DNA from: Thalia democratica
Lineage: Eukaryota
DNA length: 64,000 bases
NCBI GenBank assembly: GCA_965202585.1
Contig: OZ241828.1
Span: forward strand, 20,088,001 to 20,152,000
Direction: 5' to 3'
Both the position numbers and the translations under genes were made by a program. The notes beneath the pieces are model-generated. The model worked only from the letters and a program-made list of their open reading frames with translations. It was not told the origin of the DNA and did no database searches. Below are positions 11,601 to 35,769 of the stretch, piece by piece (the first letter of the stretch is position 1; every line of letters begins with the position of its first letter).

Positions 11601-11789
11601 TTAACTGCTGCTTCCCCCGGTAATCTTCCGGTACAAGTACGGCACTCCGTAGTAGGCCACTGTTCCCAATACACCGACCTTCACTACAATCTTCCCGGTC
11701 TTCTTCCAGTCAATCCCCTGCTGGTCATCCGCGCTCGCTAGTTGTCGCACTTTGCAATGCTCTTGCTTCAGTTCGTGGTGTTCACTCAC
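11601..11789 (-). CDS. Probable last exon of giant gene 1, encoding a C-terminal transmembrane tail anchor (VSEHH...IVVKVGVLGTVAYYGVPYLYRKITGGSSS*)
   Basis: GC-rich ORF with no ATG start, immediately preceded on the minus strand by CTAAC-CAG (branch point and acceptor); phase 0 matches the donor AAG|GTTTGA at 12035. Confidence 0.75.
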   Translation of the reverse strand: MSEHHELKQEHCKVRQLASADDQQGIDWKKTGKIVVKVGVLGTVAYYGVPYLYRKITGGSSS

Positions 11790-12035
11790 CTGGTTAGTTT
11801 AATTTTTAAGTTTGATAAAGTAGTAATTAGTTGAAAAATAAAAATCTTTCAAATGTCAGGCTTTACAAGTTTAAACGATTTTACACTGTATGAATATTCT
11901 GTTTCTAACACATTAAAAGTAAATGCAAATACAATAAAATTTTAGATATAATATTACTTAAATTAATCTATAAAAAGTAAAGCTTAAATAATTATTTTCG
12001 CTAAACAGCTATAAAAAACAACATCATCATCAAAC

Positions 12036-15000
12036 CTTGCTGACTTGACTCCTGCCTTCCTCGGGCACTTTTGCTACTTCCTTCTTGACGCTCACTGCTT
12101 CCTTCTTGACGTTCCCTCCCTTTTCCATCTCCTTCTTGACGTGCCCTCCCTTTTCCATCTCCTTCTTCAGGTTCTTCGTCGGTTGCACCCCAAGCATTCC
12201 CACGTTGCTGCCCTGCAAGCTCACCCCGTCCTCGCGGAACACCGTGTAGTTCACCATGTACGTCTGCCGCGACTCCTGCGACTCCCTCACGCTCCTGCTC
12301 GTGCTCTGGTGCGAATCTACCATCCTCTTCTCCTTGGCGTTCTGCCCTGAGTGTCCCACCGCGCTCTCGCTCTTGTCCTCTTCCGCGACGCTCTTGAAGC
12401 TCTTGAGGCTCTTCTTGTCGTCGAGGACCAGCTCCCTGGACGTGATCCTGCTTATGGAGGTGGCCGTGGCGTGCTTCTCCCATTTCACAAACTCCGACTT
12501 GTCCGAGAAGTTGGACGGGCTCCTGACTACTTGCTCCTGCTTCTTGTAATCTTTCTGCTTCCTCTGGTAGCGTTCCTTCTCCAGGTCTTCTTTCCTGACG
12601 TCCACGCTCGAGCCCTTACACAGACTCTCCTCCGCCTGGGATACCTCCTCAATGTACCGGAGCAACTCCTCTTCATCCTTGTTGCTCGGCTCCTCCGCCG
12701 TAAGAGATTTCTCCTGTTTCCTTTTGTTGCTCGGCGCGTACTCTGCCAGCCCTATGGTCCTCAAAAATCCCGACAGCCCGTACTTGGCCACGCTCGACGT
12801 CCTGCAAGAGTTGTCCTCCTGCTTGTACGACACGTTGTCGCCGGTGTGGTGCTCCGACGGCTGGACTGATGCTCTCACGTCGACGTCGCTCTCCTGCGGG
12901 TTGTCCAGGTTCGTCCCGGAGTTGTTACGCGGGAAAGTTGTCTCCACGCGCTGACCGGATCTGTCGGCCCTCAATTGAGCGAATTCTCGATGCTGCTCGG
13001 TGAACCTCGAGTAGCTGGGCTCCGACGGCCTGTAGCTTTCGGCTTGAACCGTGAACCTGGAACAGCTCGGTTCTCTCAGCTGGGAGTAGCTGGGATCTAT
13101 GTTGACGGAGCAGCGCTCGAGGTAGTACTGCTGATCCACGCTGCTGACTTTGTTGACGATTTGCTCCGTTTGACAAGCCTCTTCCACTCTGGTCTTCTCG
13201 TGGACGCTCTCCAAAGACTTCCTCCTCAGGTCTTCCGGGTTGTCCAGAGCCGTCTGCCACGAGTCGACGCTGCCCCTGCTCTGCTGGCTCTGCGTCAGGC
13301 TGAGCTTGTTGCTGTGCTTGCTCCTGCTGTGCTTGCTGCTATCGATCGCGCTGTGCTTGCTCGAGTGGCATCCCATCAGGTCCTTGGTGCTGATCAACAG
13401 CTGGACCGAGTCGGATTCCGCCACGGACCCGGCAGCTTCTTCGACTGGCTTCTCGGCGAGGTCTTGCAAGAACTCGTCCTCTTCTTGGATGTAACACGGC
13501 TGCTGCTGTTCCGGTTCGTTCAGATACACTTCGGAGTGCATGCTCAACTTGTCTGGGATTTCGCTAGGATACTCGAACTTTGGCTTGTTGCCCACCTGAG
13601 ACGAGATGAGGTCTTCCGACTCGTCTTCAACTAGTTCCTGTATGTCGTTGTGCTCCGACAAGTAATCAGGCAAGTCTTCCACGCACTCGGATATCGGCTC
13701 CGGTATGGGCTCCGTGAACTCTTCGTGGTGACTCGGCGGCAGATACTCTTCGCCCTCCGACTCTTCCTTGTGCTGCGGCTCCTCTGCCTCGGCCTCTTCC
13801 TCCTGCTCAGGTTCCGCCAGAACCTCTTCCTGCTCCACAGAGTCTTCTTCCTCTTCCGAGTACGTGGCTGACGCTCCCAGCGCGAACTTGAACCCGTCTG
13901 TCAGATCTTCAAACGCGTTGCTGAGCCGCTTGGGGTACTCGACCAGCGTGGCGATGTCTTCCACCACCGCCCTCGTCATCTCTTTGCTCACGTTGTACAT
14001 GTAGTTGTACGTGCTCTTCTGCAAGGTGTAAGTTCCGTACCTGCTGGTGCTCGCGCCTTGGTACTTGCCGTGTATGTCCTTGGCCGGCGCAGGCTTTTCC
14101 TTCTTTCTTTTGGGGACGGGAGAATTGAGAAGGGGACTTGTGGTCACGCTGTTGAGGTACTCCTCGAACGTTGGCACCTTCTTCTCAGGCTTCGGTTCCT
14201 TGACCTCCTCCTTTTGCACGGTGATCGTTTCCTCTTCCTTGGGGAAGTAGTAGTCGGACTTGTCGTCTGGACTCCTGTACCTGACAAACTGGTAGTCCTG
14301 TATCTCGTGGCCCATCAGGAACTGGTTCATGATGCTCTCCCTGAGGCTCTTGTCCGAGTACTTGTTGTTGCCGGGATGCAAAATGTCGTCTTCAGATTCT
14401 GGATGTTCATCCTCGGCTTGTTCGTTCACTTTAGTTTGAGAGATGCTCTGCTGTGCAATGAATTCGTCCTCAACATCATTTTGTTTGAATTCTTCTTTGA
14501 GGTTTTCTAACTCGTTTTGCACAAAATTGCTGTGTTCCTTATGATCAGTTTCCAACAGTTTATGTAGTTTGTCCTGCTCCTTGCGAGCGTCTTCTAGAGA
14601 CCTCTGCAGGAAATCGTTGTATGGCAAGACCTCTTCTACTACCTGAGGTTCTGGAAGTTCTTCTACTTGCTTAGGTTCTAGAAGTTCTTCCTGAGGTTCT
14701 GGAAGTTCTTGCTCAGGTTCTATAAGTTTTTCCTGAGGTTCTGGAAGTTCTTGCTCAGGTTCTGGGAGTTCTTCCTGAGGTTCTGTAAGTTCTACCTGAG
14801 GTACTGGAAGTACTTCTTCTACTTGCTCAGGTTGTGGAAGTTTTACTTCAGGTTCTGTAAGTTCTTCCTCGGGTTCCGAAGGAAGTTTATCCTGCTCCTT
14901 GCGAGCGTCTTCAAGGGACCTCTGAAGGAAATCGTTGTATGGCAAGACCTCTTCTCCCTTAAGTTCAGGAAGATTTTCTTCTACCTCAGGTAATGCTTCC

Positions 15001-18000
15001 TCAGGTTCCGAAGGCACGTGCTCTGTAATGTCGTCCTGGTCATCACTAAAACCGTCCTGATCTTCCTTGTCACTAATGGCGCTGTAGCAAGGCGCGTTCT
15101 CCTGCCTTGTGTCTACCTCACTCTCTTTCCGAGTAACTTGAACGGCTTCTTTCTCTGGTTTCTTACCAGTTAGGATCTCCTCGTCTACAAGGATCGAGTC
15201 TGCCGCTTTCTTTAATATATTAGCGTCGAAGATGGTCGGAAAGACTCCGTGCTCGTCAGTGAAGCGAGTCTCGACGTTCTCGTTTGATATTTTCTCGATG
15301 AGGCCGCCCGATTCGTTGTAAGCGTGCTTTCTGACGACGTCCTGCACAGAAAAGACGACTTCCCTGGCTGATTGAACCACGTTGTTCTGGTTCTCGTCCT
15401 CTAGAGGCGTGGAACCTAATATGTGCCCGTGGGTAAGAGGTTTCGTGAAGAGACCTATGATCCCTTGAGTTTTATCTTGCGCCCTTTCGCTTATAGCGCT
15501 AAAGTGGTCAAAGTTGTTATCTTTGACTGGGTAGTTCTCGCATTCTTGCAAGTACATCTCGTTGGCGAGGTTGTTCGAGTACTCTATCAGGTTTCTAATC
15601 GATCTGATAAGCCTCTCTTTCTCAGGTTCGTAAAAAGATTCCTTGCCTAGAATTTGTCCCTCTGTTAAGGATTGAAGGCCAATCTTTCCTAGGTTGTTAG
15701 ACTTAATCTGGTAAGGCGTCTGGTCATCTAAGCTGACCGACTTGATCACTGAAACAACTTCTTTCACCACGTTGTAGCTGGCAGTGCCAAGCATCGTTCT
15801 ATTATCGTATCTACTTGATGTAAGGTTGAGGTCTAGCACTTTCTCTAAGACGCTCGCGATCACGTTAGGGTTCTCTTCGGGGAAGAACTGCTTCGCGTCT
15901 TCCAGCTGCAGAGTTTCCACGGCGGTTTCTCCGTCGCCCAGATCGGTCGACTCGTCCGGTGCGGATGTGAGGAGGTTGAACGTGGATTGCACGACCGTTT
16001 TCGCTGATTCGATCAGCTTCTGGTGGTCGTCGTTCGTCACCGGGCTTTCTAATAGCAATTGCTCTGGTGTTAAAGAGTCTATGCCGAAGCGGTGCAAGAC
16101 TGCGGTTGAGAAATGGTTGGGATTGGTAAGACTGTACTTGCTGGCTTCCATGTTGTCGTTTGACTCTGTGACTCTTTGTTGAGTGTTTGTGTAGTCTGAC
16201 TTTAAAGTTTTGTTGGAGACAGATTTAGCAGTGCTCAACAAGTTCCTGACGCTCTTAACTAGATTTTTTTGGTTCCTGTCCTGAATGAAATCGTACCCTG
16301 TTAATTGCTGCATCGTCAACGATCCGAACCCGAATCTCTCGTAGTTGCTGGTGGTTCTGAGCAAGCTTCTCTTGCTGCCGCCCGAGTTGGTGCTTGCCAC
16401 TCTCTCAATGAGACTTGCAACCACTCTAGCACTTTCCTTGACCGTTGAAGCGGAATCAAAGGTGGCTTTGGAGATTGATTTTTCCTGCGCCGTGTCGAGA
16501 ACGTCCCTTAAAAGATCTTTGACCTCTTCTGCGTCCGGTTGGTCTTCAAGACTCTTTTCTAATTTGTGGTCGCTTTGATGGTGCACCACAGATTTTACTA
16601 TTTCATATTTGGATTCTACCACCGCCTTTGCGGATTCAATGAACTTTTTGTGGTCCTCATTATAGACTTTACTCTCTCCAATCAACTGCTTCGGAGTGAG
16701 GGCTTCCATGCCGAATTTGCACAAGACTTGCGGGTCCGGTTGGCGGGAAACCAAGTGCTCGGGGGTGTTGAGAGGTATATCAGATTTGTACGACCTCAGG
16801 TGAGGATAAAGATTGATCCTGGATTTGGCCTTCTCTTGCAAGTAGCTGCCGTTAATGACCAGGTTCCTTACTGATTGGACCAAGTTGCTGTGATTCTTGT
16901 CCGGTATTTCCTTCCTACCCAACAGCTGATCGGTGGTCAAAGAGTTGAAACCGAATCTTTCAAAGTTGGACGTGCTAGATATTTCCTTATGATCACTACT
17001 GGATAAGAGTGCCACTTTTTCAATGGCTGACAAGACCGCGTGCGCTTTATGATCTTCAGGACCAGCATTGCCCGATAAAGACTGCAATGTGTCCTTGACT
17101 ATAGTATCCATGGCCCTATTGCTGTCCAAGACGTTCTTAAGTACCTTGACCACTGCCTCGTGGTCGTCAAAGTCGGCAGAACAATCAGAATTATTACACT
17201 GACCTGAATTTTCCACTGTTTCCAAGGTCTGCACCCTCTGCTTGAGCGTGCCCAGTTCGCCGATACTCCTCTTCAGGTTGTTCTGCAGCACCTCCGCCAT
17301 GTCCACAACGTCCTCTGCCACGTCCTGGCCCAGGTTCGGGTCGTCCTGGTAGCTCGCGCTGTCCCTGTCAAGCTGCTTCATGCGCTCCTTGAAAGAGTCC
17401 TTGAGGTTGACGTTGTCCTCCAGCCTCGCTTGCAGCTCCTCGGCGATGTCAATCATCTCGTTGGCCGCTCCCGCATTCCAGGTCGCTCCCTCCTTCAAAT
17501 CGTCAACCGACTTGACTCTCGACTTGAACGCCGTCAGCATCTTGATGTCGGTCACCTGCGTCTTCCTGGACTGCTCCGTCAAGTCGACCATCTGCCCCGC
17601 AACTTCCCAAACGGCCCGGTTGATCACCTCCTCAAGCGACGCCTTCGGGTCCTTGTGCTGCCGGTAGAAGTCCCTCAGCAGTTTCTTCTGCTCCATCGCG
17701 GTCTTGGCGCTCTCTTCGAGCATCTGCGGGGTCTTGTCGTCGAACGCGGTGATCTCGATCTGCTTCTTGAGCTCCTCCAGCTCCCTGAGCGTGTTGGTGA
17801 TGTCCTTGTGCACCAGGGTCATCATGCCTATGGTGTCGTTGCCCATGTCCGACGCGAACTTCTTCGCCCTGCTCTCCCTGTCTGACGCGTCGATCCTGGT
17901 GAGAGTTTTGTCGATCTTCTCCGCGGCTTGCTCCACGTCGTCCATCAAGAGCTCTTCGAGGTCTATGACGTCACACAGCGTGTTGTGGATCGCCTCCTTG

Positions 18001-21000
18001 GTCTCCTCCTCGATTCCGTCCATGTTGGTCACCTGCACCTTCATTGTCTTCTTCTGCTTGAAGTTGTACTCGACGTGGCGCATCAGCTGCTTGATGGACA
18101 GCACCATGTCGTCGGCCAGCGCGACAAACACCTCGTCTTCCTCTCCTTCCCTGTTGTTCCTGACGAGGTTGATCCTCTCGCTCAGGCACTCGAGCGCCTT
18201 GTGGTCGCACCTCAGGTTCTCGTCCGACTCGTCCACCAGGTCAATGATGTCCGACATGATGCCCATGACGATGCTGACGCTCTCGCCCACGCTCCTCGCC
18301 TTGCTCCGCCTCCTCGTGAGAAAGTCGCCCTTCACGCTCGGCTGGCTCACGTGCGTCTTGAGGCTGCTGGCGTCGTCGCACGCTCTCGAGCGGTGCTGCT
18401 CGTTCTTGATGCTGGAAAGCGCGCTGCTTATCAGCTGCTGCACGTTGATGGCCTGCTGGCTCCTCGCCTTCGTGAAGGGGTTCGTCGACACCTCCGAGAT
18501 CTTTTCGGTCACGTAGTTCGTCCTGGACTGGCAAGGAAGCACCAGCTCCACTGCCGAGGTCTCCTCCTTCTTGATGGCCTCGATCTGCTTCTTAAACTCC
18601 GTGATCGCGTCCACGTTGGACTTGAGCTGGACGTGCATGCTGGCGATGGATTCGAGGATGTCGTTCACCAGCTGATCGGCGAACTTGTACACCTCCGACT
18701 TGCGGTCCATCTTCTCCATGGCGTTCTGCACGGCCTGCAGGTTGTTCTCCGAGCACACCAGGTCGTCCCTGAGCAGCTGCTGCACGTCCACCACGTCGCA
18801 CGCGATGCAGTACACCTGGCTCCGGTGCTCGTCTCCCACTCTCGCTCCCAGCGACTTGATCTGCGCGATGAACTCCGCGTTGACGTTGACGTTGTACTCG
18901 ACGTTCATCTGGACGAACTTGCACACGTCCACGATCTCCACCGAGACGTCCACCGCCTTGTCGCTGTCGCACTCCTTGATGATCATCATGCCGCGCTCGC
19001 GCATCCCCTCCAGGTCCTGCACGTCCTGCGCCAGCTTGTTGCACGTCTCCTCCACCATGTCCACTATGTCTCTGGCGATGCCGTTGATCACCGAGTCCGT
19101 CTCCGAGAGGACCTCCTCTTCTTCTTCCTTCGGCTCTTCCTTGGCCTCTTCGTCGGCCAGGTGCCTGACTTCGGTCTGCGAGAGGGACAGGCTCTTCTCG
19201 GCTTCAACGACCACTTCTTCCTCGCTCTGGTCCTCCAGCAAGAGTCCCCTGAGCATCTCCCTGAACTCTGCCAGCTCCTCGATGTGCTCGTCTATTTGCA
19301 CCGGCACGTCCACCATCATTCTCATGAACCTGTCCAGCAGCAGGTGCTGGAGGTCGTTGTCCTTGATCTGGTCGGTCAGCCTCGACTGCTGGTTGCACCT
19401 CAGCTTCAGCTCGGTGAACTCCTTGCTCCTGTTGCTCAGGTCGGCCTTCAGCGCCTCGTCCGTGTCGATGAGGTCGTTGCACGACTGCATCAGGAAGCAC
19501 CGGTCCTCGTCCTTGATCACGTTCGGCACTCTCCTGGTCTCCTCCAATATCTCCCGCTTCCTGGTGATCTCCTTGTCCAGGTCTTCGAGGTACCGGTCCG
19601 CGATTTCCATCATGTCCAAACTCGACTGCACCCAGAACGGGTCCTGCGACTTTTGCAGCGGCTTGGCGAAGTTGCGCTGGATCATGCTGGCCTTGTACAC
19701 GTTGCGCGAACCGTTTATCTCGCACAGGATGATGTCCCTGATGTCGTTCTTGTAACCCGTCGACCACGTCTTGTGCGACTCCGCCTTTTCTTCCTCCTTC
19801 TCCGGTTCGGCCACTTCTTCGATGTTTAAGTCGCATTTGACCTTTTTCTTGCCGCCCTTGTGGGATTTTCCAGACTTTTTGCTGGCTACAGACTTTGTGT
19901 CTGGGATGACTTTAGTCTTTGGTGTGTCTTCTGCTGGCTTCTGCTCGGATTCACTTGGAGATTTTCCGACAGACGACTGCTTAGACTTGTTCTCCTTGAC
20001 CTTCTTGTTCAGCATGGCCAGGGCTTCCTTGATTTTCTCCCCGGTCATCTCCAGACTGTCATACTTGACTGATTTCCTGTCTGTCTTCTCCGAGACGTTG
20101 TCCTTGACAGACTTTGCCACGCTCGTGTTGCTGTCTACCGGCAGCGGCTCCACAGAGCTCACGACGCTGACCTGGTCCACGTTTGTATCTGTGATTTCGC
20201 TCGTGCTCTCGTAGCTGTCGACTCCCAGGTCTTTGATCTTTTTCTTGAGATCTCTAACTTGCTGGTCGCTGCTCTTGCAGTAGTTCAGCATGACCTGGTT
20301 GTTCAGCCGCATGTCCCTGATGATCGTCTTCATGTAGAACTGCTCCTTGCCGTTGGTGTCTGTTTGCATGAGCTGCTCCTCCCTGAAGTACCTCACCTGC
20401 TTCACTGCGCTCCTCATGTCCTTGTGGAGCGTCTTCTCGAGGTCCAAGGCGTCCTTGGCGAGGGCTATGACAATGCTCCTGTTCTCCGCGTTCAGGACCG
20501 GCACCGACTTCAGCTCGCTCCTGATCTTGTCTTTCTCGTTCGCGTCCTTCAAGAAGATCTTCTGCATGTCGGCGCAGAAGCCGTGGACCTCGTTCGCGTA
20601 GTCCGACAACGGCAGGTCGTCGTTGACCGACTCTATCGCCTTGATCTGGTCCTTGAAGCTGTCCAGGGTGATCTGCTGCCTCTCCAGCGCGTGCCTCGAC
20701 GCTTCGATGATCATCACGGCGTCTTCCGTGATCTCCATCACCTGGCTCTTGCTCTCTTCCACCTTGTTCTCTTCGAACTCCTCGTCCGAAACCTCCTTCT
20801 CAAAGTTCACCGGTACCATGTCGATGTTCTTGCTCGCGCTCAGCGACTTTATCTGGCCCTTGAGCAGCTCGATCTCCTTGTAGTCGTGCTTGAAGTTGTT
20901 CTGCAGGACGCTGGCCAGGCTCACCATGTCGTTGGCGATGTCCGAGATGGAGCTCTTCCTCTCCTCCTTGTAGAAGTGCTGCGACCTCTTCTGCTCCTCC

Positions 21001-27269: not shown

Positions 27270-27483
27270 ACTTAAATACAACAAACAAATAAAAAATTAT
27301 TGTGATACTAACGGTTTTCCACTTCTGTATGGTTCGGACACGACAACACTGACTTTGCTTGCTTTATTCTTGCTTGTAGACTCTTGAAGAGGCGAAATTC
27401 TTGTACATGCAGGCTGTTTCTGACTTGGTAAAACTTGTAGTTTGTGAAAAAATTCAAAAATATCTTGACTTCTATTGTTCGTG

Positions 27484-27504
27484 TGACGTAATTGCCATAG
27501 CAAC
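27484..27504. promoter_or_regulatory. CRE/PAR-like TGACGTAA abutting an RFX X-box-like palindrome ATTGCCATAGCAAC in the shared divergent promoter
   Basis: 12/14 match to GTTGCCATGGCAAC, near the middle of the 553-bp gap between the two ATGs. Confidence 0.55.
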
Positions 27505-27822
27505 TTTAAAATTCCAAATTTTTTTGTATGATTGTGAAACTGAAATCATATCATTTAATGTGGATCTAATTACGATTTTAGTATATTTTATTATTACTTA
27601 TTTAGAATAATATTTTTAAATAAAAATATTCCATGATATATTCTAGTAATTGACCATATATTTTATTTTTTTGTTTACTGTTTTTTGTGCTCGTTTTTAC
27701 TGTGTTTTATCTGAAAATATACATTAATTGCCTTACTATAAACTGTTAAGTGTATATACGTATTGAATTATTGTATCTAAAACTTGTTATTTTGCATCTT
27801 AAAACTGTTAATAGACCAAAAT

Positions 27823-30800
27823 ATGTCATCGGAAGATATAAGCGAGTTTAAAGTACACGAAATCACATACACTTGTAGTGGATTGAGCATAGAACAAGAT
27901 AAAAACGACAAAAATAAGTCAAATAAAACCGAAACTAAAAACTTAGGTGAACAATCATCACAATTAAATCCAAACAAAATAAATAGTGATTCTTCCTTGT
28001 CTACAGTCTTAACATTTCAATCAGTTTTAGAAAGTTTAAGTTTTACGGATGAAAAGAATAAAACTTTATCTAGCCCATGTATCAATAACTCATTTACATC
28101 TTTTATGAATGCTTTGGAAAACTCAAATGCAAAATACACCAAGTACAATCAATCTTCTAAATGGACATCTAACCTAAAAAACAGAGACTTAACGAACTTA
28201 TCTAGCAACTGTGCTTATTCTTTAAACAAAAACTCTACAAACCAAGCTACTAAGGCACATAAACCTCTTAATAAAAACCAACCAATAACTGCTAATTTAG
28301 AAGAAACTAAAGAAGCAAAGAACGTATCCTGTTCAGATCAAGCCCCTACAAAAATCAACAAAAACCTTACTCAAATTAAGCAATGTGAACAAGTAGTTAT
28401 CTACAAGGAAATCGAAAATGCAGTACTTCAATCAGTGAATGATGTGCTTCAATCAGATCAATATGAAGCAAACATGGTAGCAGCAATCAAAGAAGTGATG
28501 GACTGTAAGAAGCTGTCCAAGTCAAAAAGACAGAAGATATCCTCAATAATGTTAGTTTTAAACCAGTTTTCTAAAAGAATAAGCGCAAGTAACATTATCA
28601 GTCTAAAAGATCAGTCTTTTGATCCAAGCTTTTTTATCTACAATCAACTTTTAGGCATAGAGCCAGTAAATAACTTAGTTTTTAGCCATGCTATAAAAGT
28701 AGCTAACAAAGTTATAAAAGATTATACTTGCTTTTCTGATTCAAAAAGCAGTTTTAGTAGTGTTTTTTCTGAGATATCTAACAATAAAATAGATCAAAGC
28801 ATATCTAACAGTAACAGTATTTTAAATGAAAACAAAAATAAAAGAAATAGTGCAGTAAGTGATAAAAAAGATATTAGCATAGTTAGTTTTAAACAAGAAA
28901 TTATTAGTTTAAGTTCATCATCTACTCTTGAAAACAAATTTAGCTCTACTGATAAAAAATTAAGTTTAAACAAAGAATATAAGCAAATTGACACTCAAAA
29001 AATACAAAACACACTTGAGAGCATTTCTGAAAGTCTTAAAGAAACTAAAAACAGTTTTAACAAAACTCAATCGTTAAGTAAAATAGACAAAAGTGTTATT
29101 TCTTCTGACAAAAATACTGAAGTAAAACAATCAGTTTCTATTGAAAATCAAAGCAATCGTAAAGAAATGCTAGAATGCTTTAAAGACATTGACGATACTT
29201 ACGATAACTTGGTGCAAAGTCTCACTAAACAGTTGGAAAATTTAGATGATAATATAACTAACAGTTCAACTAAAAACTCTGATATAATTTATGATGTTTA
29301 CACAAAAAGTGTTAAGTATAATAACCTGAGTCCAATTCCAAATACACAAACTGAAATAGTTAAACAAGAACATATAGAAAACAAACTAAATAACTTAATA
29401 GTAGCTTCTGATATATCTCTAAATTATAAGTCTACAGATAATGATCTTAAACCATTTAAGAATCCTCTAAATCAATTTAAAAATACTAAAAAAGAGGAAA
29501 ACATAGAAAAGCAAAAACCTAGTACCATAGAAGTTACTGATATTTCTCAAAGCTGTACTTCTAATGAAAGTGCTTACGAAAGGTTTTACTTTCATTCAGA
29601 CTACAGATGTTTTAGGGACAATTGTAATAAAAAATCTTCATCTTTAAACGGAGAACCATTTCAAAATCGAAATAACAACGAAAATTTTAAGGTTAACCAA
29701 ATATGTCCAGCTGAATGTCATGGTATAAAACTAAGTAGCTGTAATATTAATGACCAAATCAAATCAGTAAATTCAAGTATTGATTTAAGTAGTAAGGTTT
29801 CAGATATTAATCCTGACATAAACAATCAAAAATATTTAGTTGAAGACCAAAACTTAATCGTAAGAACAGATCTAATTAAAACCGAACTTTTTAGTAGTCC
29901 AAGTAATAAATCAATCGTAAATAAAAACAGTAATAAAGAGACACCAAAACATTTTGAGAGTGTAGACAAATCATTTAATAGTCTAGTTCAAACTTTAACT
30001 GAGCAGCTAGAAGACATTGAAGTCAATGTGCCTAGCAGATTAAGTTTAGATACTTTTGATTACGACGGTTCAGAAATGTCAAATCATGACCAAAGTACTA
30101 GTATAGATTCTAAAATCGTAAGTAAATCTTTAAATATAAGTAAGAGTATAACTATTGACAACTTTGAGCCTATAGCAAGCCATGAAAAAATAAAACTTAA
30201 AAAAGAAAGCAGTTCTGAAAAAAATAAGACATCAAAACGTTTTACAAATAATAAGTCTTTTAATAACTTGGTTCAAACTTTAACTGAACAGTTACAAGAC
30301 ATTGATGTAAATGTGCCTAGCAGGTTGAGTTTAGATACTTTTCAAAGTTTAGAAGTAGAAAGTAAACCTTCAGAAAAGTATAGTTGTTCTAATGGTAAAG
30401 CTGAAAGTGTTACAAACAAAATATTAAACACTGACAAAAATGTATCAAAATTAAAGATTTCTGAAAATAATTTGACAAATTGTTCCAAATTTTCATCTAA
30501 TTATGTTAGTACAAAATCTTTTTTAACAAAAAGTATAATAGAATCTGTCAAAAACATAGATTTTAACTTAAATGATATGAAAAACTCAATTTTAAACTGT
30601 GTTTTACAAGTAGGTAGTAAGTATGGAAAAAACCTCTCTAAAGTAAACGTAATTGAACACTTAAGCTCGATTAAAGACTTTAAATTAGATAGTTTCAAAG
30701 AAAATGAAACAACAAAAGTTTATGACTTTCAGATAAATAGTATCGAAGAAGTGTGCAAGTTTTTAGAGAATGTTTTTGATAAAGAAGCAAGTTCTTTAGA

Positions 30801-33800
30801 TTTAAAAAGCAATGTTGAATTTGCATCATCAACAAAAAGTTCAGAAATAGAAAACAAAACTAACTCGTTTTCAAACACAAATCTAGAAAACAACATGAAA
30901 CCAAAAACACATAATAATGACTTATATGCATTTGAAAACCCTTCGAAAAATACTGAAGAAATTAGAAATGTTTTAAATAATTTTTGTAAAATTCCAAGCA
31001 ATGATTTGTACACTTTTGAAAGCCCTTCGAGAAATACTGTAGAAATAAAAAATAATTCAAATAATTGCAATAAGATACCAAATAATGATTTGTACACTTT
31101 TGAAAGTCCTTCAAGAAATACTATAGAAATCAAAAATTATTTTGAAAAAGACACAAGTAATGAAATTGTTAATTCTAATTCTCATTGTACATTTAAAACG
31201 ATTTACAAAAGCTTAGATAACAATTCTGTAAGCAATAATTCAGTGAAAAACCCAGTTGTTAAAGAAACTGAAGTGATATCTTGTAAAGGCGATTCTTATT
31301 GCATGAAAGAAGAAACTTTGTACGAAACAATAAGTAACAGCGCTACAACAAAATCGTATAAAACTGACAACTTCAATGGCTCTATTGAAAAAGCTGACAC
31401 AAAATCAGCAGACAACACGCTTTTTGAAGCGATTTCACAAGAAACAGACAAAAAAGTGAGTTCTAAAAACAATGACAAGTTTAGTCGAAAGTCATTTAGC
31501 AACAAAGGTTCTTGCTATCTAACAGATACAACACAATCTATGAAAACTTGTCGAGCAAGCCCTTATACCAGTGACAAACTAGAATATATAACATTAAATG
31601 ACCAAGACTCTTGCCAATTTACAGAATCTATGAAAACTTGTCAAGAAGGTAGTTTGGAAAAAGTCAATTTTAAAACAAATCAAGTAATTAGGGATGCATC
31701 TTTGTCTTCTTATAAAACAGGTCTGCAGACATTAAATTCAGAAAAACTTTCCAATTTAAAAGACAACAAGTTTGATGCAAACTACAACTCGATTATTAAT
31801 ACAATTACTGAAAACAGTTTAAAGTCTAAAGTTTCAGAGTTTGAAAGTAACTTGACTAACTGCACAGCTCAAAAAAGCTTAAAATCGGGAACTACAGAAC
31901 ATGAAAGTTGTAATTTAGAGATTTATCTAGAAGAGTCTAAAGCAGACAACAGTTATTTAGAAAGTTTTATCAGTGATGATGGTTTCAAGGCGAAGACAGA
32001 CGCTTTAGAAAGCATGCTTAATGGACACGAGATTGAAAACAGTTCACTTTTGAACTGCGTCTTACAGGCAGGAGATAAGTATGTGGGAATCAAAACTAAT
32101 CTAAATAACGAAAACTTGGATACAATTACGGAAAACAGTTCTATACTAAACACAAAACAAGATAATGACTGCAAGTTGAAAACAGTTGAAATAAATCATA
32201 AAATACCCAAAACTAACATGTTTACTTTTGAAAGCCTTTCAAAAAGTACAGTAGAAACTGATTTAAAAAAAGAAAATAAGACGCTAATCAATGACTTGTA
32301 CACTTTTGAGAGTCCTTCCAGAATTACTGTAGAAGTTTTAAAAGCTTTAACACCAAACAGCTCTGTTTTAAACACAAGTTCAAGTAATGGTGATCGTTGC
32401 AGTGTAAGTAAAAAACAAGGTGAAAAGTCTGAGAAAATACCTAAATGCGATTTATACACTTTCGAGAGTCCTTCAAGAAATACTGTAGAAATTAAAAACA
32501 ATGCAGAAGGTAATAAAAACATTGTAGAAGGGCAAACTAAGAGTTATGATGCTGAAAAAAACGCATTTATGAACGAGCTAGACTCACTGTTGCAGTGTGT
32601 TCAAAAAGCAGCAGACAGTTCTAGTTCAAAAGATAATTTAAACAAGGAAAATTTGATTACATACAGTGAAAAACTAGTAACACAGAAAATCTTTAAACAA
32701 GACGAGATTTTAGCAGAGCAAAGTAAAAGCATTCAATACAACTCTTCTAACAAAAGCGCAAATGTTGTTGAAAGTATAAGTCATTTAGCAGAAGATTCTA
32801 AACAAAAGAAAAATTTTAAGACCATTGGAACTTCAGAAATCTGTAAAGATGGTTTAACTGATAACAAAAATGAGACTGAGACAGTTTACAAGTATTGCCA
32901 AGAAAACAAAAGTTATTATACTGACTTTAGTTTTGCAATGAAAGACAGTGTAGACAAATACTCAAAAATCACAAAGTCTGCACAAAATACAGTTGATAAA
33001 ACTGAAAACTCAATGTCTACCGAACCAACACAAAATGATAAACTTAATATTGTAGAAACGCCAGTTGTAGAAAATTTATCAGAAAAATGCAATTCAAATG
33101 AAATAGAGCATAAACAAAGCAATCACTATCAAAGTTGTTATGAAAGTAAAAGCAGCTGCGAAGAAATAGAAAACACAATAGAATTAAATCAAATTTATGT
33201 GGCGGGATCTATAAGCAGTTACTTCGAAACATGCTGTGAAGAATTGTCTAAAAAGTTGCAAAAACTCGAACTAGGAACAAATAAAAACACAGAAAATTTT
33301 GAAAATGCTCACGACAACATGAACTATTCAAAAGTTTCAAAATCTTTAGATACTAACAATTTAGACTTGGTTAATAAAGATCTAGTAAACAATGCCCATA
33401 AATCAGAAAACATAGTCAGTGCAAACTTGGTGTTTCCCAACTCAGACGCAAAGGATTTCACGGTAGAAACCTCGCAAGACACAAACAAAATAGAACTGTT
33501 TCCAAGCTCGAACAGCAGTGAAGAAACCTTGCACAACATAACGAGTCTGAGAGAAACAGACTCTTATTTCAAATCCACGGAGAGCAGCGAAATGAACAGT
33601 GTTCTGGAACAGATCAAAATGAGTTTGAAGAAAGACATAAACGAAATTGACGTCTTCAACGAAAACTTGCACTCGCTAAAAGTTTCCGGGGTTGTGAAAA
33701 ATAACGGTTTCGCAGGGCTATTTAATAACTTTTTTGACAAAAACAAAAAAGTTGAAATTGAAAATGATAATGCAAACAATATTGATAGTACTGTAAATCA

Positions 33801-35769
33801 CAGTGTGTTAAGTAAATTAAAAATGTCCTTTAATCCACCCAGTAATTTGAACAACATGTTTGATAATATGATCCAATCGAAACTTTTGAACACTCAGCAA
33901 GAAACTAATTCAGTAAACAACGAATTTGTAGTCCAGAATGTACAAGTCGTACAAAATGAGCAGCTTGATTTTGAAAACATATATCCCAATGTACTAAATG
34001 AACAGTTGGATAACACAAACGATAATAATCCACTTTCAAACTATGCGAGCTTACTATTTGGTGATGCCGATTTGTACGCAAACTTTATGCAGAAAGATAA
34101 AAACAACGATCTCAATTACCTCCTTGATACCGAGTTGAATGATGTAAGCATGAAGCCGAATCATTTGAAAAGTGCGTTTATTAATTTAGAAAAAGATCCC
34201 GTTCAAATAGACGACTTCCTTCAAAACAATGAGTCTAATCTCCAGTTTACAAAGTTTGAAAATTTTGATGGTGAAAAACCTTCTATTCAAAAGATTTTTG
34301 AAAAAATGAAAAGTTCAGAAACTGTTAAGCCGGTGAAAATGTTCACCAGCCCTTTTAGGTTTTCAAATCTTAAACAAAAAGTTATTGATCAACAAAATAA
34401 GATTTTAGAAACTGTGGAAACCTTGAAAAAGTATCAAAGCAAGCCCTTTAGGTCTTTATTAACTACAGATTTCAAATCGAATTTGACAAACAAAGAAAAA
34501 AGTTTTCCAGAAGTTGTGAAAAGTCCAAACAAAAGTTTTCATGATGAATCAAACAACAGTCTGCCAAAAAAGCAGGGCAATCTTCACTACAAAGACATAA
34601 AGTCTGAACTTTGCTTGAAAGCAAACAAATCTAAAAAGCATAGGAAAATGTCAGAAAATTTTATTGAAAAAATGGAAACTTTAAATGAAATTGTTGAAAC
34701 AAACTTGAACAAGTTTAACCTCAAAGAAATGTCTAAGGAAACTTTCTTCAGTGCAAAAGAAGAAGCCGATGTTTGTGATAAACCAAAAGTTAAAGATTTC
34801 GTTGGTTCACAAAACGAGGTATTAGAAAAAAACCAACAAAACACAATCAATTTTGTAGTAGAAAATGAAAAATTAAGTAATTCATACAGTTTAGTACACA
34901 GTAAAACAGAAAATAAAGTTTTTGATAAATGCTCAGTTGGAGACAGTGTTTCTAACAACATAGAAATAGAAGATTTTATTTCATCCATAAAAGATTCAAG
35001 CCAATCTATAAGTACAGTTAAACCTAAGGTTTTACAAGTTACAACAGAAAGCAAACCTACTAAAACCAAGCAATCTAAAACTTACAAAAAAGAGCGTAAA
35101 AACAAAGCGAAAAAGTCTGAAAAAGTAAACAAAACCAAAAGTAAAAGCAGTGTCAACAGTTTAAAGGTTCAAAAAGATCTGAAACGCGCACAATCTAAAA
35201 AAGAAGATAAATGCATGTCTGCTATTGACTTTAAAACTGAAAAAGAGTCCATTAAGTCTGAGTGTACACTTAAGTTACAGGAACTACTAGATGAAAATTA
35301 CTCAAAAATATCTGAAAAAGCTTCTAAACAGGCTGATCAAGAAGATACGTATATTCTCAGGGACAACAAGTTTGTAAGAAAACATGCAAAACCGTCAAAG
35401 AAAAACAAAACTGACAAACCAGAAAAGAAACATAAAAGTGTTGCAGATAGCAACCACGTCATAGTGCCTACAAAGTACTTGAAAAAATCTCTGAGAAAGT
35501 CCAAGGGAAATTTCAAGGAATTGTGCAAGAGCGTCGTGTCGAAAAACAGCGCTCTGTCGCTGACGAGCCTCGACAGCTTCAAGAGCTCGTACAGCCGGAC
35601 GGACAAACGCGTCGTCATCATAGACGAGTTCGTCAACCAGAACAAAGAAAAGCCGCAGTATTCCGAGATGGCGCAGCTGGTGTACCAGCTGTCGATAGTG
35701 GCCACTTTCATTTTCATGGCCCAGGTTGGCTGCCCGGCCCTGGTGAAGCGTTTCAGTCACGGGAAATAA
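27823..35769 (+). CDS. Giant gene 2 (2,648 aa): Ser/Asn/Lys/Glu-rich, largely disordered protein with a C-terminal transmembrane tail anchor; no recognised family
   Basis: 7.9-kb ORF; first ATG at 27823; C-terminus LVYQLSIVATFIFMAQVGCPALVKRFSHGK*; AATAAA about 40 bp after the stop. Confidence 0.88.
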   Translation: MSSEDISEFKVHEITYTCSGLSIEQDKNDKNKSNKTETKNLGEQSSQLNPNKINSDSSLSTVLTFQSVLESLSFTDEKNKTLSSPCINNSFTSFMNALENSNAKYTKYNQSSKWTSNLKNRDLTNLSSNCAYSLNKNSTNQATKAHKPLNKNQPITANLEETKEAKNVSCSDQAPTKINKNLTQIKQCEQVVIYKEIENAVLQSVNDVLQSDQYEANMVAAIKEVMDCKKLSKSKRQKISSIMLVLNQFSKRISASNIISLKDQSFDPSFFIYNQLLGIEPVNNLVFSHAIKVANKVIKDYTCFSDSKSSFSSVFSEISNNKIDQSISNSNSILNENKNKRNSAVSDKKDISIVSFKQEIISLSSSSTLENKFSSTDKKLSLNKEYKQIDTQKIQNTLESISESLKETKNSFNKTQSLSKIDKSVISSDKNTEVKQSVSIENQSNRKEMLECFKDIDDTYDNLVQSLTKQLENLDDNITNSSTKNSDIIYDVYTKSVKYNNLSPIPNTQTEIVKQEHIENKLNNLIVASDISLNYKSTDNDLKPFKNPLNQFKNTKKEENIEKQKPSTIEVTDISQSCTSNESAYERFYFHSDYRCFRDNCNKKSSSLNGEPFQNRNNNENFKVNQICPAECHGIKLSSCNINDQIKSVNSSIDLSSKVSDINPDINNQKYLVEDQNLIVRTDLIKTELFSSPSNKSIVNKNSNKETPKHFESVDKSFNSLVQTLTEQLEDIEVNVPSRLSLDTFDYDGSEMSNHDQSTSIDSKIVSKSLNISKSITIDNFEPIASHEKIKLKKESSSEKNKTSKRFTNNKSFNNLVQTLTEQLQDIDVNVPSRLSLDTFQSLEVESKPSEKYSCSNGKAESVTNKILNTDKNVSKLKISENNLTNCSKFSSNYVSTKSFLTKSIIESVKNIDFNLNDMKNSILNCVLQVGSKYGKNLSKVNVIEHLSSIKDFKLDSFKENETTKVYDFQINSIEEVCKFLENVFDKEASSLDLKSNVEFASSTKSSEIENKTNSFSNTNLENNMKPKTHNNDLYAFENPSKNTEEIRNVLNNFCKIPSNDLYTFESPSRNTVEIKNNSNNCNKIPNNDLYTFESPSRNTIEIKNYFEKDTSNEIVNSNSHCTFKTIYKSLDNNSVSNNSVKNPVVKETEVISCKGDSYCMKEETLYETISNSATTKSYKTDNFNGSIEKADTKSADNTLFEAISQETDKKVSSKNNDKFSRKSFSNKGSCYLTDTTQSMKTCRASPYTSDKLEYITLNDQDSCQFTESMKTCQEGSLEKVNFKTNQVIRDASLSSYKTGLQTLNSEKLSNLKDNKFDANYNSIINTITENSLKSKVSEFESNLTNCTAQKSLKSGTTEHESCNLEIYLEESKADNSYLESFISDDGFKAKTDALESMLNGHEIENSSLLNCVLQAGDKYVGIKTNLNNENLDTITENSSILNTKQDNDCKLKTVEINHKIPKTNMFTFESLSKSTVETDLKKENKTLINDLYTFESPSRITVEVLKALTPNSSVLNTSSSNGDRCSVSKKQGEKSEKIPKCDLYTFESPSRNTVEIKNNAEGNKNIVEGQTKSYDAEKNAFMNELDSLLQCVQKAADSSSSKDNLNKENLITYSEKLVTQKIFKQDEILAEQSKSIQYNSSNKSANVVESISHLAEDSKQKKNFKTIGTSEICKDGLTDNKNETETVYKYCQENKSYYTDFSFAMKDSVDKYSKITKSAQNTVDKTENSMSTEPTQNDKLNIVETPVVENLSEKCNSNEIEHKQSNHYQSCYESKSSCEEIENTIELNQIYVAGSISSYFETCCEELSKKLQKLELGTNKNTENFENAHDNMNYSKVSKSLDTNNLDLVNKDLVNNAHKSENIVSANLVFPNSDAKDFTVETSQDTNKIELFPSSNSSEETLHNITSLRETDSYFKSTESSEMNSVLEQIKMSLKKDINEIDVFNENLHSLKVSGVVKNNGFAGLFNNFFDKNKKVEIENDNANNIDSTVNHSVLSKLKMSFNPPSNLNNMFDNMIQSKLLNTQQETNSVNNEFVVQNVQVVQNEQLDFENIYPNVLNEQLDNTNDNNPLSNYASLLFGDADLYANFMQKDKNNDLNYLLDTELNDVSMKPNHLKSAFINLEKDPVQIDDFLQNNESNLQFTKFENFDGEKPSIQKIFEKMKSSETVKPVKMFTSPFRFSNLKQKVIDQQNKILETVETLKKYQSKPFRSLLTTDFKSNLTNKEKSFPEVVKSPNKSFHDESNNSLPKKQGNLHYKDIKSELCLKANKSKKHRKMSENFIEKMETLNEIVETNLNKFNLKEMSKETFFSAKEEADVCDKPKVKDFVGSQNEVLEKNQQNTINFVVENEKLSNSYSLVHSKTENKVFDKCSVGDSVSNNIEIEDFISSIKDSSQSISTVKPKVLQVTTESKPTKTKQSKTYKKERKNKAKKSEKVNKTKSKSSVNSLKVQKDLKRAQSKKEDKCMSAIDFKTEKESIKSECTLKLQELLDENYSKISEKASKQADQEDTYILRDNKFVRKHAKPSKKNKTDKPEKKHKSVADSNHVIVPTKYLKKSLRKSKGNFKELCKSVVSKNSALSLTSLDSFKSSYSRTDKRVVIIDEFVNQNKEKPQYSEMAQLVYQLSIVATFIFMAQVGCPALVKRFSHGK
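30916..32490 (+). repeat. Six dispersed copies of the motif NDLYTFESPSRNTVEI in giant gene 2
   Basis: Copies near 30916, 31000, 31084, 32215, 32289 and 32449. Confidence 0.9.

What the first reader, a model, noticed from the sequence alone, without database searches (positions are those of the whole stretch)
11601..35769. Head-to-head pair of giant paralogous tail-anchored proteins (about 5,140 and 2,648 aa) of no recognisable family
Seen: two divergent ORFs only 553 bp apart, with essentially no bulk similarity but three shared landmarks in the same relative roles: the N-terminal FKVHEI[LT]Y motif, a QLLG...PVxN...I..A..V[VI] domain (six copies in gene 1, one in gene 2), and a C-terminal TM ending GxPxLx[RK][RK]. 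Inference: an ancient inverted duplication, after which each copy expanded its own repeats. The two would be co-regulated, very long, mostly disordered scaffolds projecting from an organelle surface, such as a tether, spacer or sheath. The X-box hints at ciliated cells or sperm. I recognise no homolog, but could not search.
Basis: partly seen in the sequence, partly recalled or inferred. Interest (0 to 1): 0.82.

Follow-up and report, generated by a model that had tools for sequence, protein, structure and literature searches.

The report
Orphan giant membrane-anchored gene pair
Two very large neighbouring genes of a marine tunicate, read in opposite directions from one short control region, encode proteins with no known relatives that share an identical short tip and a membrane anchor at the tail. 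They are kept intact in a related species, but their function is untested.

Summary
The two ORFs are real. Gene 1 is on the minus strand: 5,140 aa once a 246-bp GT..AG intron is removed. Gene 2 is on the plus strand: 2,648 aa. Their ATGs are 553 bp apart.

Of the three "shared landmarks", one holds firmly. The N-terminal FKVHEIxY peptide occurs at a real ORF start only in these two genes across the 802-Mb genome.

The tail anchor is clear for gene 2. For gene 1 it is marginal and depends on an intron that no RNA confirms. The two C-termini show no detectable sequence similarity.

The "QLLG domain" is real in gene 1: six units arranged as three 210-aa super-repeats, the most constrained part of the gene (dN/dS 0.12). 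The claimed copy in gene 2 is not above chance.

Marine metagenome contigs carry the same head-to-head locus from a relative (dS about 0.14). Its ORFs are intact, every gap is a whole number of codons, and the X-box is conserved. dN/dS is 0.42 for gene 1 and 0.40–0.69 for gene 2.

Gene 1 is not mostly disordered. It has at least 14 helical 42-aa repeats that fold as long four-helix bundles (pLDDT 91).

No homolog, Pfam family or specific fold match was found, and no RNA evidence.

My best reading is a pair of lineage-restricted, organelle-anchored tethers that present a common tip motif. That mechanism is inferred, not shown.

The parts
12036..27269 (-). Gene 1, exon 1 (5,078 codons from the ATG at 27269)
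   Evidence: Open frame. The ortholog in metagenome contigs is intact over 3,287 codons, with 18 gaps that are all whole codons; dS 0.136, dN 0.057, dN/dS 0.42.
11790..12035 (-). Gene 1, predicted 246-bp intron (AAG|GTTTGA ... AACCAG|GTG)
   Evidence: Read from the sequence. GC is 0.21 in the intron against 0.53 in the next exon. No RNA support. If the intron is not spliced, the protein ends at the TGA at 12030-12032 without a membrane segment.
11601..11789 (-). Gene 1, exon 2 (62 codons plus stop), encoding the putative tail anchor
   Evidence: GC 0.53. Single copy in the genome.
11631..11690 (-). Gene 1, putative TMD IVVKVGVLGTVAYYGVPYLY, followed by the tail RKITGGSSS (+2)
   Evidence: The 19-residue Kyte-Doolittle mean is 1.46, the second highest in the protein. 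GRAVY is 1.32, which is marginal.
27222..27245 (-). Gene 1, N-terminal tip motif FKVHEILY (residues 9-16)
   Evidence: Three of the seven shared codons differ synonymously from those of gene 2 (read). The motif is unchanged in the relative.
27270..27822 (.). Shared 553-bp intergenic region, the presumed bidirectional promoter
   Evidence: About 94% identical to the relative, with a 64-nt block free of change around the X-box. All three indels seen in organisms A and B fall in this region.
27491..27504 (+). X-box-like RFX site ATTGCCATAGCAAC (12 of 14 to the palindromic consensus)
   Evidence: 0.11 matches expected per window. Identical in the relative. A CRE-like TGACGTAA at 27484-27491 abuts it.
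27823..35769 (+). Gene 2, single-exon CDS (2,648 aa plus stop)
   Evidence: The ortholog is open over 848 and 1,872 codons, interrupted only by a 100-N scaffold gap. dN/dS is 0.69 and 0.40 for the two stretches.
27847..27870 (+). Gene 2, N-terminal tip motif FKVHEITY (residues 10-17)
   Evidence: The first 40 codons show no difference from the relative.
35677..35745 (+). Gene 2, TMD LVYQLSIVATFIFMAQVGCPALV, followed by the tail KRFSHGK (+3)
   Evidence: Highest hydropathy in the protein at 1.98. GRAVY 1.77-1.88. The relative keeps the TMD with three conservative changes and an identical tail.
17214..20957 (-). Gene 1, helical core: at least 14 copies of a 42-aa helical repeat (residues 2105-3352), grouped in fours
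   Evidence: HMM E-values of 1e-13 to 1e-16 per copy. The AF2 model of residues 2721-2905 has four helices of about 40 residues each, pLDDT 91.2, pTM 0.85. GC3 is 0.85-0.97.
15255..17174 (-). Gene 1, three 210-aa 'QLLG' super-repeats (residues 3366-4005), each holding two FGxxSLTxxQLLG-plus-helix units
   Evidence: AF2 model all-alpha, pLDDT 70.5, pTM 0.73. dN/dS 0.12. A 67-aa TARA fragment is 57% identical to unit 5.
21373..22045 (-). Gene 1, 69/138-bp tandem array (the 23-aa Ser-rich KSIDDKSISSNGSSKGAKNN... repeats)
   Evidence: Most of residues 1501-2000 are absent from the relative (387 codons). GC3 is 0.24-0.36.
14642..14816 (-). Gene 1, 21-bp array (acidic PEPQEEL repeats)
30931..31141 (+). 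Gene 2, 84-bp array (NDLYTFESPSRNTVEIKN repeats)
   Evidence: The relative carries an extra tandem copy of about 1.07 kb of this region.
33373..35592 (+). Gene 2, constrained C-terminal third (residues 1851-2590)
   Evidence: dN/dS is 0.23-0.27 here against 0.57-0.76 upstream. There are local GC3 peaks.

Best explanation
This is a single-copy, head-to-head pair of giant protein-coding genes. It appears restricted to one lineage of marine, planktonic tunicates.

Both proteins start with the same short peptide (MS-x5/6-FKVHEI-x-Y). Both end in a single C-terminal hydrophobic segment followed by a short basic tail. They are therefore most likely tail-anchored proteins whose whole mass faces the cytosol.

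I read them as long organelle-anchored tethers or spacers. The anchor fixes the C-terminus in a membrane. The weakly hydrophobic TMDs with +2 and +3 tails fit the mitochondrial outer membrane (or peroxisomes) better than the ER. The common N-terminal tip binds a shared partner at a distance. The middle serves as a rod and spacer.

In gene 1 the middle is an ordered chain of long four-helix bundles and three strongly conserved 210-aa helical modules. These probably form a second, gene-1-specific binding platform, flanked by acidic, indel-prone low-complexity stretches. In gene 2 the middle is mainly Ser/Thr/Asn/Lys-rich low-complexity sequence that evolves almost neutrally but stays in frame, with a constrained C-terminal third.

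The shared 553-bp region carries a conserved X-box, so the pair may be driven by RFX factors in ciliated cells or sperm.

Shown: the genes, the motif, the repeats, the folds, conservation and selection. Inferred: the membrane anchoring, the target organelle, the tether function, the RFX control, and whole-gene (rather than 5'-end) duplication.
For: - Gene structure and motifs.
- The FKVHEIxY pattern marks an ORF start only in these two genes across the 802-Mb genome. The shared codons differ at three synonymous sites, so the constraint acts on the peptide.
- Hydropathy and TMD/tail values. The rule that a low-hydrophobicity TMD plus a positive tail favours mitochondria or peroxisomes over ER comes from PMC5450235.
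- The same head-to-head locus occurs in three metagenome contigs of one relative, with ORFs intact. Gene 1 shows 18 gaps, all whole codons, and no stop among about 680 substitutions; dN/dS 0.42. Gene 2 gives 0.69 and 0.40.
- Regional constraint: QLLG modules 0.12; gene 2 residues 1851-2590, 0.23-0.27; gene 2 codons 1-40, no change at all; large middle stretches, 0.6-0.9.
- Organisms A and B show indels only in the intergenic region across the 6 kb examined.
- Ordered core: 42-aa repeat HMM and four-helix-bundle model at pLDDT 91.
- X-box.
- Conserved ends with a divergent long middle, and a 20-50-residue capture motif at the extreme N-terminus, is how golgin tethers are built (PMC5267433). This is an analogy only.
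Against: - There is no transcript evidence. No run on record as RNA held the locus, and two runs of unknown kind from the same samples and study showed only spurious short matches.
- Gene 1's anchor depends on an unconfirmed intron, and its TMD is weak (GRAVY 1.32, with a Lys inside).
- The C-termini of the two proteins are not detectably homologous, so 'both tail-anchored' could be coincidence.
- The TA-targeting rules were derived in mammals and yeast, not in tunicates.
- The N-terminal motif matches no known linear motif that I could name.
- Conservation of the X-box across only about 6% divergence is weak evidence: a 21-nt site survives by chance with probability about 0.27.
- dS varies five-fold along gene 1, so the regional dN/dS values partly reflect mutational heterogeneity.
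Confidence: 0.4

Rival explanations
1. The two genes are unrelated and share only their first 40 or so codons. A small inverted duplication, or gene conversion, of a promoter-proximal segment gave both genes the same start. The bodies and C-terminal anchors have independent origins.
For: Every test beyond the first 40 residues fails: BLASTP, the QLLG HMM, the 42-aa repeat HMM, Smith-Waterman ranking, and the C-terminal genome searches. Composition and codon usage differ greatly: GC3 is 0.65 in gene 1 and 0.28 in gene 2.
Against: Both have the same unusual overall design: giant, essentially single-exon, no signal peptide, a basic juxtamembrane stretch, a single C-terminal TMD ending G-x-P-x-L-x-[RK][RK], and a 7-9-residue tail. 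Large parts of both evolve near-neutrally and gain or lose repeats quickly. An old whole-gene duplicate would therefore be expected to have lost detectable similarity.
Confidence: 0.3
2. The conserved N-terminal stretch is primarily a nucleotide-level element, for example for translation initiation, trans-splice or 5'-end processing, or promoter-proximal regulation. It would be mirrored on both sides of the bidirectional promoter and would not be a protein-binding motif.
For: Gene 2's first 120 coding nucleotides show no difference from the relative, synonymous sites included, where about seven would be expected. The 17-nt TTTAAAGTACAYGARAT is 88% identical between the two genes (pair I6).
Against: The motif lies in frame at almost the same codon position in both genes (9 and 10). 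Three of its seven shared codons differ only synonymously between the genes. This is the signature of selection on the peptide. Similarity also extends at the amino-acid level to MS... and NKSNxT.
Confidence: 0.1
3. Gene 1 is not membrane-anchored. The intron is not used, and the protein ends at ...SQVSKV as a soluble giant scaffold. Only gene 2 is tail-anchored.
For: There is an in-frame TGA immediately after the putative donor. No RNA evidence exists. The gene 1 TMD is marginal, with GRAVY 1.32 and an internal Lys.
Against: Exon 2 stands out at GC 0.53 against 0.21 for the intron. It keeps a 62-codon open frame in phase with canonical GT..AG sites. It ends in a hydrophobic segment plus a basic tail of the same layout as gene 2.
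Confidence: 0.2
4. These are AKAP-like scaffolds. The recurrent amphipathic helices, such as LIESAKAVVES and LVQSVRNLV, would dock RIIa-type dimerisation domains of PKA or of ciliary or sperm RIIa proteins.
For: This rests only on my own reading of the translation, together with the cilia or sperm hint from the X-box.
Against: The hydrophobic positions follow a heptad a/d/g pattern (positions 1, 2, 5, 8, 9, 12, 15, 16), not the 4-spaced pairs of RII-binding helices (my own reading). In the AF2 models these helices pack inside bundles. Pfam finds no AKAP family. No binding test was run.
Confidence: 0.05

Closest known systems
Tail-anchored golgin tethers (giantin/GOLGB1, golgin-84, CASP) and golgins in general
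   Same: Very long cytosolic proteins fixed to an organelle by the C-terminus. Function sits in a short (20-50 residue) motif at the extreme N-terminus. Paralogs share the ends while the long middle diverges (PMC5267433).
   Different: No sequence or Pfam relationship. The N-terminal motif is unlike the golgin capture motifs (from memory). The ordered part is predicted as intramolecular four-helix bundles rather than a dimeric coiled coil. The TMD and tail values point away from ER/Golgi. The proteins are 1.6 to 2 or more times longer than most golgins.
Nesprins / KASH-domain giants
   Same: Giant proteins with a C-terminal transmembrane segment and a rod of tandem helical bundles. They link an organelle (the nucleus) to the cytoskeleton.
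   Different: The tail beyond the TMD is only 7-9 residues and has no PPPX-type KASH peptide. Pfam finds no spectrin repeats and no CH domain.
Rods of tandem helical bundles (talin rod, alpha-catenin/vinculin)
   Same: Serial 4-5-helix bundles forming an extended scaffold that may sense force. These are the weak structural neighbours (Z about 4).
   Different: Z values below 5 are within noise for helical proteins. The best Foldseek matches are designed four-helix maquettes and ClyA, which means generic geometry. There is no sequence similarity.
Mitochondrial/peroxisomal tail-anchored adaptors (e.g. MAVS, MFF, Miro, GDAP1, ACBD5)
   Same: A moderately hydrophobic C-terminal TMD followed by a short, positively charged tail (PMC5450235).
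   Different: Those proteins are 10 to 50 times smaller and belong to defined families. No homology was found.

Membership tests
Tail-anchored (TA) membrane proteins (a topological class) | A single hydrophobic TMD within about 30 residues of the C-terminus | tested here: met
   In gene 2 the TMD is residues 2619-2641 of 2,648, Kyte-Doolittle 1.98, the top segment of the protein. In gene 1 it is residues 5112-5131 of 5,140, Kyte-Doolittle 1.46 and GRAVY 1.32. The gene 1 case is marginal and depends on the predicted intron.
Tail-anchored (TA) membrane proteins (a topological class) | No N-terminal signal peptide and no other TMD | tested here: met
   The N-termini are polar. The only other hydropathy peaks are amphipathic helices of the bundle region, at 1.5 or below.
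Tail-anchored (TA) membrane proteins (a topological class) | Post-translational insertion with the N-terminus facing the cytosol | not testable with these tools
   Needs expression and localisation experiments.
KASH-domain proteins (nesprins) | A luminal peptide of about 30 residues after the TMD, ending in PPPX | tested here: not met
   The tails are RKITGGSSS (9 aa) and KRFSHGK (7 aa). Pfam finds no KASH, spectrin or CH domain.
Golgins | Sequence membership of a golgin family (GRIP, GRAB, golgin-84, giantin or CASP domains) | tested here: not met
   No Pfam family at E<=0.1 apart from one sub-threshold Bag6_BAGS hit. No homolog in the large protein databases.
Golgins | A predominantly dimeric coiled-coil rod | tested here: inconclusive
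   The AF2 monomer models give intramolecular four-helix bundles. Oligomeric state was not modelled. Gene 2 is mostly low-complexity sequence.
RFX (X-box) regulated ciliary or sperm genes | An X-box (GTNRCC N0-3 RGYAAC) in the proximal promoter | tested here: met
   ATTGCCATAGCAAC lies 222 bp upstream of the gene 1 ATG and 319 bp upstream of the gene 2 ATG. It matches the palindromic consensus at 12 of 14 positions, with 0.11 expected per window, and is identical in the relative.
RFX (X-box) regulated ciliary or sperm genes | RFX-dependent expression in ciliated cells | not testable with these tools
   No RNA data could be laid on the locus.
AKAPs (PKA-anchoring proteins) | An amphipathic RII-binding helix with 4-spaced hydrophobic pairs, or an AKAP family domain | tested here: not met
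   No AKAP Pfam family. The helices show heptad a/d/g spacing (read) and are buried in the predicted bundles. Binding was not tested.

The most novel reading that the evidence does not exclude
The pair defines a previously undescribed type of organelle tether. It would consist of two giant tail-anchored proteins, co-expressed from one RFX-controlled bidirectional promoter, that anchor in the mitochondrial outer membrane and use an identical N-terminal octapeptide to hold a common partner such as the axoneme or another cytoskeletal element. One protein would be a stiff rod of four-helix bundles and the other a floppy spacer. Such a pair could position or slide the single sperm mitochondrion, or organise organelles in ciliated cells of pelagic tunicates.
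Probability: 0.12. Interest if true: 0.7.

Novelty: new variant of a known kind. Interest (0 to 1): 0.45.

Why it matters
If the reading holds, this is a lineage-restricted solution to a general problem: how to hold an organelle at a defined distance from something else. It would be built from protein modules without known relatives.

Those modules include:
- a 42-aa helix that assembles into four-helix bundles of roughly 60 Å (my estimate from the approximately 40-residue helices);
- a 210-aa helical module under strong constraint;
- an eight-residue tip motif that is unique in the genome.

The locus is also a clean natural example of a protein whose ends and length are selected while most of its sequence drifts. 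Frame and ORF are kept across dozens of indels with dN/dS of 0.6-0.9. That is useful for thinking about entropic spacers and about how orphan giant genes evolve.

On present evidence it remains an uncharacterised orphan pair without expression data.

Tried and rejected
NO RESULT FROM SEARCHES
- Pfam on both proteins: nothing except a sub-threshold Bag6_BAGS hit.
- Exhaustive phmmer search with gene 1 residues 2800-3990: one 67-aa TARA fragment only.
- Word-indexed searches: gene 2 residues 1-420 and gene 1 residues 4250-5078 found nothing. Gene 2 residues 1850-2648 found only the close ortholog.
- ESM Atlas, twice: no usable hit.
- Whole-genome searches for paralogs of four large pieces and of both C-termini: self-hits only.

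FOLD SEARCHES
- The QLLG super-repeat model gave no Foldseek hit at E<=0.001, and VIA-align Z stayed below 5.
- The four-helix-bundle model matched only designed maquettes, ClyA and generic bundles. I rejected these as evidence of kinship.

RNA EVIDENCE
- Both run searches listed no RNA holder.
- Two runs of unknown kind (X10, X11) gave only spurious matches of about 20-33 nt.

REJECTED IDEAS
- Gene 2 holds a QLLG unit.
- Gene 2 holds 42-aa helical repeats. The best hit scores -2.5 bits, within the shuffle range. It lies at residues 1923-1947, overlaps a BLASTP alignment with E 6.5, and coincides with a GC3 peak, but it is not significant.
- Foreign or viral origin of GC-rich gene 1. The GC excess sits at third codon positions. 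Earlier notes describe the same GC3 mosaic across this genome. The gene has a predicted (unconfirmed) spliceosomal-type GT..AG intron and a syntenic ortholog.
- Pseudogene or chance ORF.
- KASH, golgin and AKAP membership (see the membership tests).
- The apparent break of gene 2 in the TARA scaffold. It is a run of 100 N, a scaffold gap that I left unfilled, not a mutation.

OTHER
- The initial self-BLAST for repeats returned only the identity hit. It was replaced by a chunked search.
- Complex prediction was not used, because there is no specific binding claim to test.

Full report
**1. What is there**

The window is very AT-rich (about 22-30% GC outside genes). It holds one long GC-richer block at 12-27 kb.

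Two giant ORFs face away from each other.
- Gene 1 is on the minus strand. Its ATG is at 27269 and the frame is open to 12036.
- A canonical donor (AAG|GTTTGA) and acceptor (AACCAG|GTG) define a 246-bp intron. A 62-codon exon (11601-11789) then follows in phase. The product is 5,140 aa.
- The exon has GC 0.53 against 0.21 for the intron. No RNA confirms the splice.
- Gene 2 is on the plus strand, 27823-35769, a single exon of 2,648 aa.
- The two ATGs are 553 bp apart.

**2. The three 'shared landmarks'**

*(a) The N-terminus holds.*
- The first 40 residues are 42% identical, with an invariant FKVHEI-x-Y block.
- A degenerate DNA pattern for this octapeptide hits five places in the 802-Mb genome, against two for the reversed control.
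- The three other hits lie in short or stop-interrupted frames and are chance matches.
- The shared codons differ at three synonymous positions (CAT/CAC, GAG/GAA, ATT/ATC). This argues for selection on the peptide.

*(b) The C-terminus is weaker than stated.*
- Gene 2 ends in the most hydrophobic segment of the protein (Kyte-Doolittle 1.98, GRAVY 1.77-1.88) plus the tail KRFSHGK.
- Gene 1 ends in a weak segment (Kyte-Doolittle 1.46, GRAVY 1.32) plus RKITGGSSS.
- Beyond the G-x-P-x-L-x-[RK][RK] pattern, the two tails are 15% identical.
- Neither retrieves the other from the genome at E<=10.

*(c) The QLLG domain is real in gene 1 only.*
- Six units in gene 1 are significantly similar to each other (E down to 1e-19).
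- They are organised as three 210-aa super-repeats at residues 3366-4005.
- An HMM of the six units does not hit the proposed gene 2 copy.
- That copy's Smith-Waterman score (42) is beaten by an unrelated gene 2 locus (47).

Overall BLASTP between the proteins gives nothing better than E 0.066.

**3.

*Helical core of gene 1.*
- Gene 1 contains at least 14 copies of a 42-aa helical repeat between residues 2105 and 3352. Each scores E 1e-13 to 1e-16 against the repeat HMM.
- The repeats are grouped in fours.
- AlphaFold2 on one group (residues 2721-2905), using the other groups as its alignment, gives four helices of about 40 residues each. I read this as a long antiparallel four-helix bundle. 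pLDDT is 91.2 and pTM 0.85.
- Its nearest structures are designed maquette bundles (TM 0.69) and ClyA, which means generic geometry.

*The 210-aa super-repeat.* It folds as an all-alpha domain (pLDDT 70.5, pTM 0.73) with no convincing structural neighbour.

*Gene 2.*
- It has no match to the 42-aa repeat. Its best score is -2.5 bits, while shuffled sequences reach 7.9.
- It is 30-40% Ser+Thr+Asn.
- About 75% of its windows fall on the disordered side of a charge-hydropathy plot.

*Private repeats and charge.*
- Each gene has its own tandem arrays.
- Gene 1 carries a net charge of -255.
- Both proteins become basic just before the TMD.

**4. Are they functional genes?**

*No RNA.* No RNA could be brought to bear.

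*Evidence from organisms A and B.*
- DNA contigs from the source species and a second organism cover the 6 kb examined.
- They show many substitutions and only three indels, all in the intergenic region.
- Of 182 variant positions, the 40 listed gave 5 synonymous to 9 non-synonymous changes in gene 1 and 5 to 21 in gene 2.

*An orthologous locus.*
- The last protein search found an 82%-identical ortholog of the gene 2 C-terminal part on a 19.9-kb TARA Oceans scaffold.
- Two further ENA metagenome contigs carry the same lineage, differing at 13-25 nt in 9.9 kb.
- All show the same head-to-head arrangement.

*Selection.*
- Gene 1's ortholog is open for 3,287 codons. It has 18 gaps, all whole codons; dS 0.136, dN 0.057, dN/dS 0.42.
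- Gene 2's ortholog is open for 848 and 1,872 codons; dN/dS is 0.69 and 0.40.
- The only interruption is a 100-N scaffold gap, which I left unfilled.
- The middle parts gain and lose sequence quickly. The relative lacks most of the 69-bp array of gene 1 and has an extra copy of about 1.07 kb in gene 2.

*Regional dN/dS.*

| Region | dN/dS |
|---|---|
| Gene 1, QLLG modules | 0.12 |
| Gene 1, residues 2541-2720 | 0.19 |
| Gene 1, four-helix bundles | 0.35-0.57 |
| Gene 1, residues 501-1500 | about 0.9 |
| Gene 2, codons 1-40 | no difference at all |
| Gene 2, residues 331-1850 | 0.57-0.76 |
| Gene 2, residues 1851-2590 | 0.23-0.27 |

dS itself varies from 0.04 to 0.24 along gene 1, so these ratios are approximate.

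**5. Regulation**
- The intergenic region holds ATTGCCATAGCAAC, a 12-of-14 match to the palindromic X-box, with 0.11 expected per window.
- A CRE-like TGACGTAA abuts it.
- Both sit in a 64-nt block that is unchanged in the relative, within a region that is otherwise about 94% identical.
- This is suggestive, not proof, of RFX control.

**6. Homology**
- There is no Pfam family.
- An exhaustive phmmer search of 1.84 billion representatives with gene 1 residues 2800-3990 found only a 67-aa TARA fragment. It is 57% identical to QLLG unit 5, so a more distant relative also has this module.
- The other searches were blank.
- There are no paralogs elsewhere in the genome.
- Earlier notes of this scan call the organism a marine tunicate. 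The metagenome hits fit a planktonic animal.

**7. Interpretation**

The pattern is this:
- a unique, strictly conserved N-terminal peptide;
- a C-terminal anchor of the tail-anchored type;
- a long middle that keeps its frame and length class while much of its sequence drifts.

That is the design of membrane-anchored tethers such as golgins, where a 20-50-residue N-terminal motif does the capturing (PMC5267433).

The TMD and tail values are a low-GRAVY TMD with a +2 or +3 tail. By the rules of PMC5450235, these favour mitochondria or peroxisomes over ER.

I therefore propose two organelle-anchored tethers that share a tip ligand. Gene 1 adds an ordered rod and a conserved 3 x 210-aa platform. 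This is inference (confidence about 0.4).

Whole-gene inverted duplication is plausible. Only the first 40 or so codons are demonstrably homologous, so a 5'-end duplication is a serious rival.

KASH, golgin and AKAP memberships were tested and not met.

**8. Verdict**

This is a real, conserved, selected pair of orphan giant genes with novel repeat modules. The paralogy claim is only partly supported.

Function, expression and localisation remain open. Interest is moderate.

Noticed in passing
window 12036-27269 (gene 1) and 27823-35769 (gene 2): GC3 is extremely mosaic within single exons. In gene 1 it ranges from 0.24 to 0.97: codons 2001-3300 have third-position T at 3% and A at 8%, for example AAC 66 against AAT 1. 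Gene 2 sits at 0.12-0.4 for most of its length but reaches 0.78-0.86 in its last 100 codons. Neighbouring housekeeping exons have GC3 of about 0.32-0.45. Earlier notes of this scan describe similar GC3 islands across the genome, and one says that GC3 rises with exon length. Gene 2, an 8-kb exon with GC3 0.28, is an exception to that rule.
   Followed up: partly
window 15971-27269 compared with L012:1-9863: Synonymous divergence from the relative varies about five-fold along gene 1 (dS 0.044-0.24). It tends to be highest in some GC3-rich or constrained segments, while dN is fairly flat (0.02-0.07). Intergenic divergence is about 0.06. Regional dN/dS therefore mixes constraint with mutational or gene-conversion heterogeneity.
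   Followed up: partly
window 27484-27491: A CRE-like octamer, TGACGTAA, directly abuts the X-box. Both lie in a 64-nt block that is unchanged in the relative.
   Followed up: partly
L011:9878-11756 compared with window 30628-31888; L011:2101-2277 compared with window 21359-22696: The metagenome relative carries a tandem segmental duplication of about 1.07 kb inside gene 2. It also lacks about 1.3 kb of the 69-bp array of gene 1. All of these changes are in frame, so the length of the spacer parts turns over quickly.
   Followed up: partly
L002 (TARA_SAMEA2621006 scaffold_348829, 533 bp): A 67-aa ORF is 57% identical to QLLG unit 5 of gene 1. It is evidence of a more distant planktonic relative with this module. 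The similarity stops abruptly after YEPEKER, so the short scaffold may be chimeric or carry an indel.
   Followed up: no
window 43588-43601: A second X-box-like site, GTTGCCCTCGCAAC (two mismatches), lies in the region that earlier notes assign to a cathepsin B gene.
   Followed up: no
window 27272-27296 and 27800-27822: Both ATGs are preceded within 1-9 nt by a pyrimidine-rich tract ending in AG (tttgttgtatttaag|tATG and ctgttaatag|accaaaatATG). This could be a trans-splice acceptor, as is common in tunicates. It is untested.
   Followed up: no
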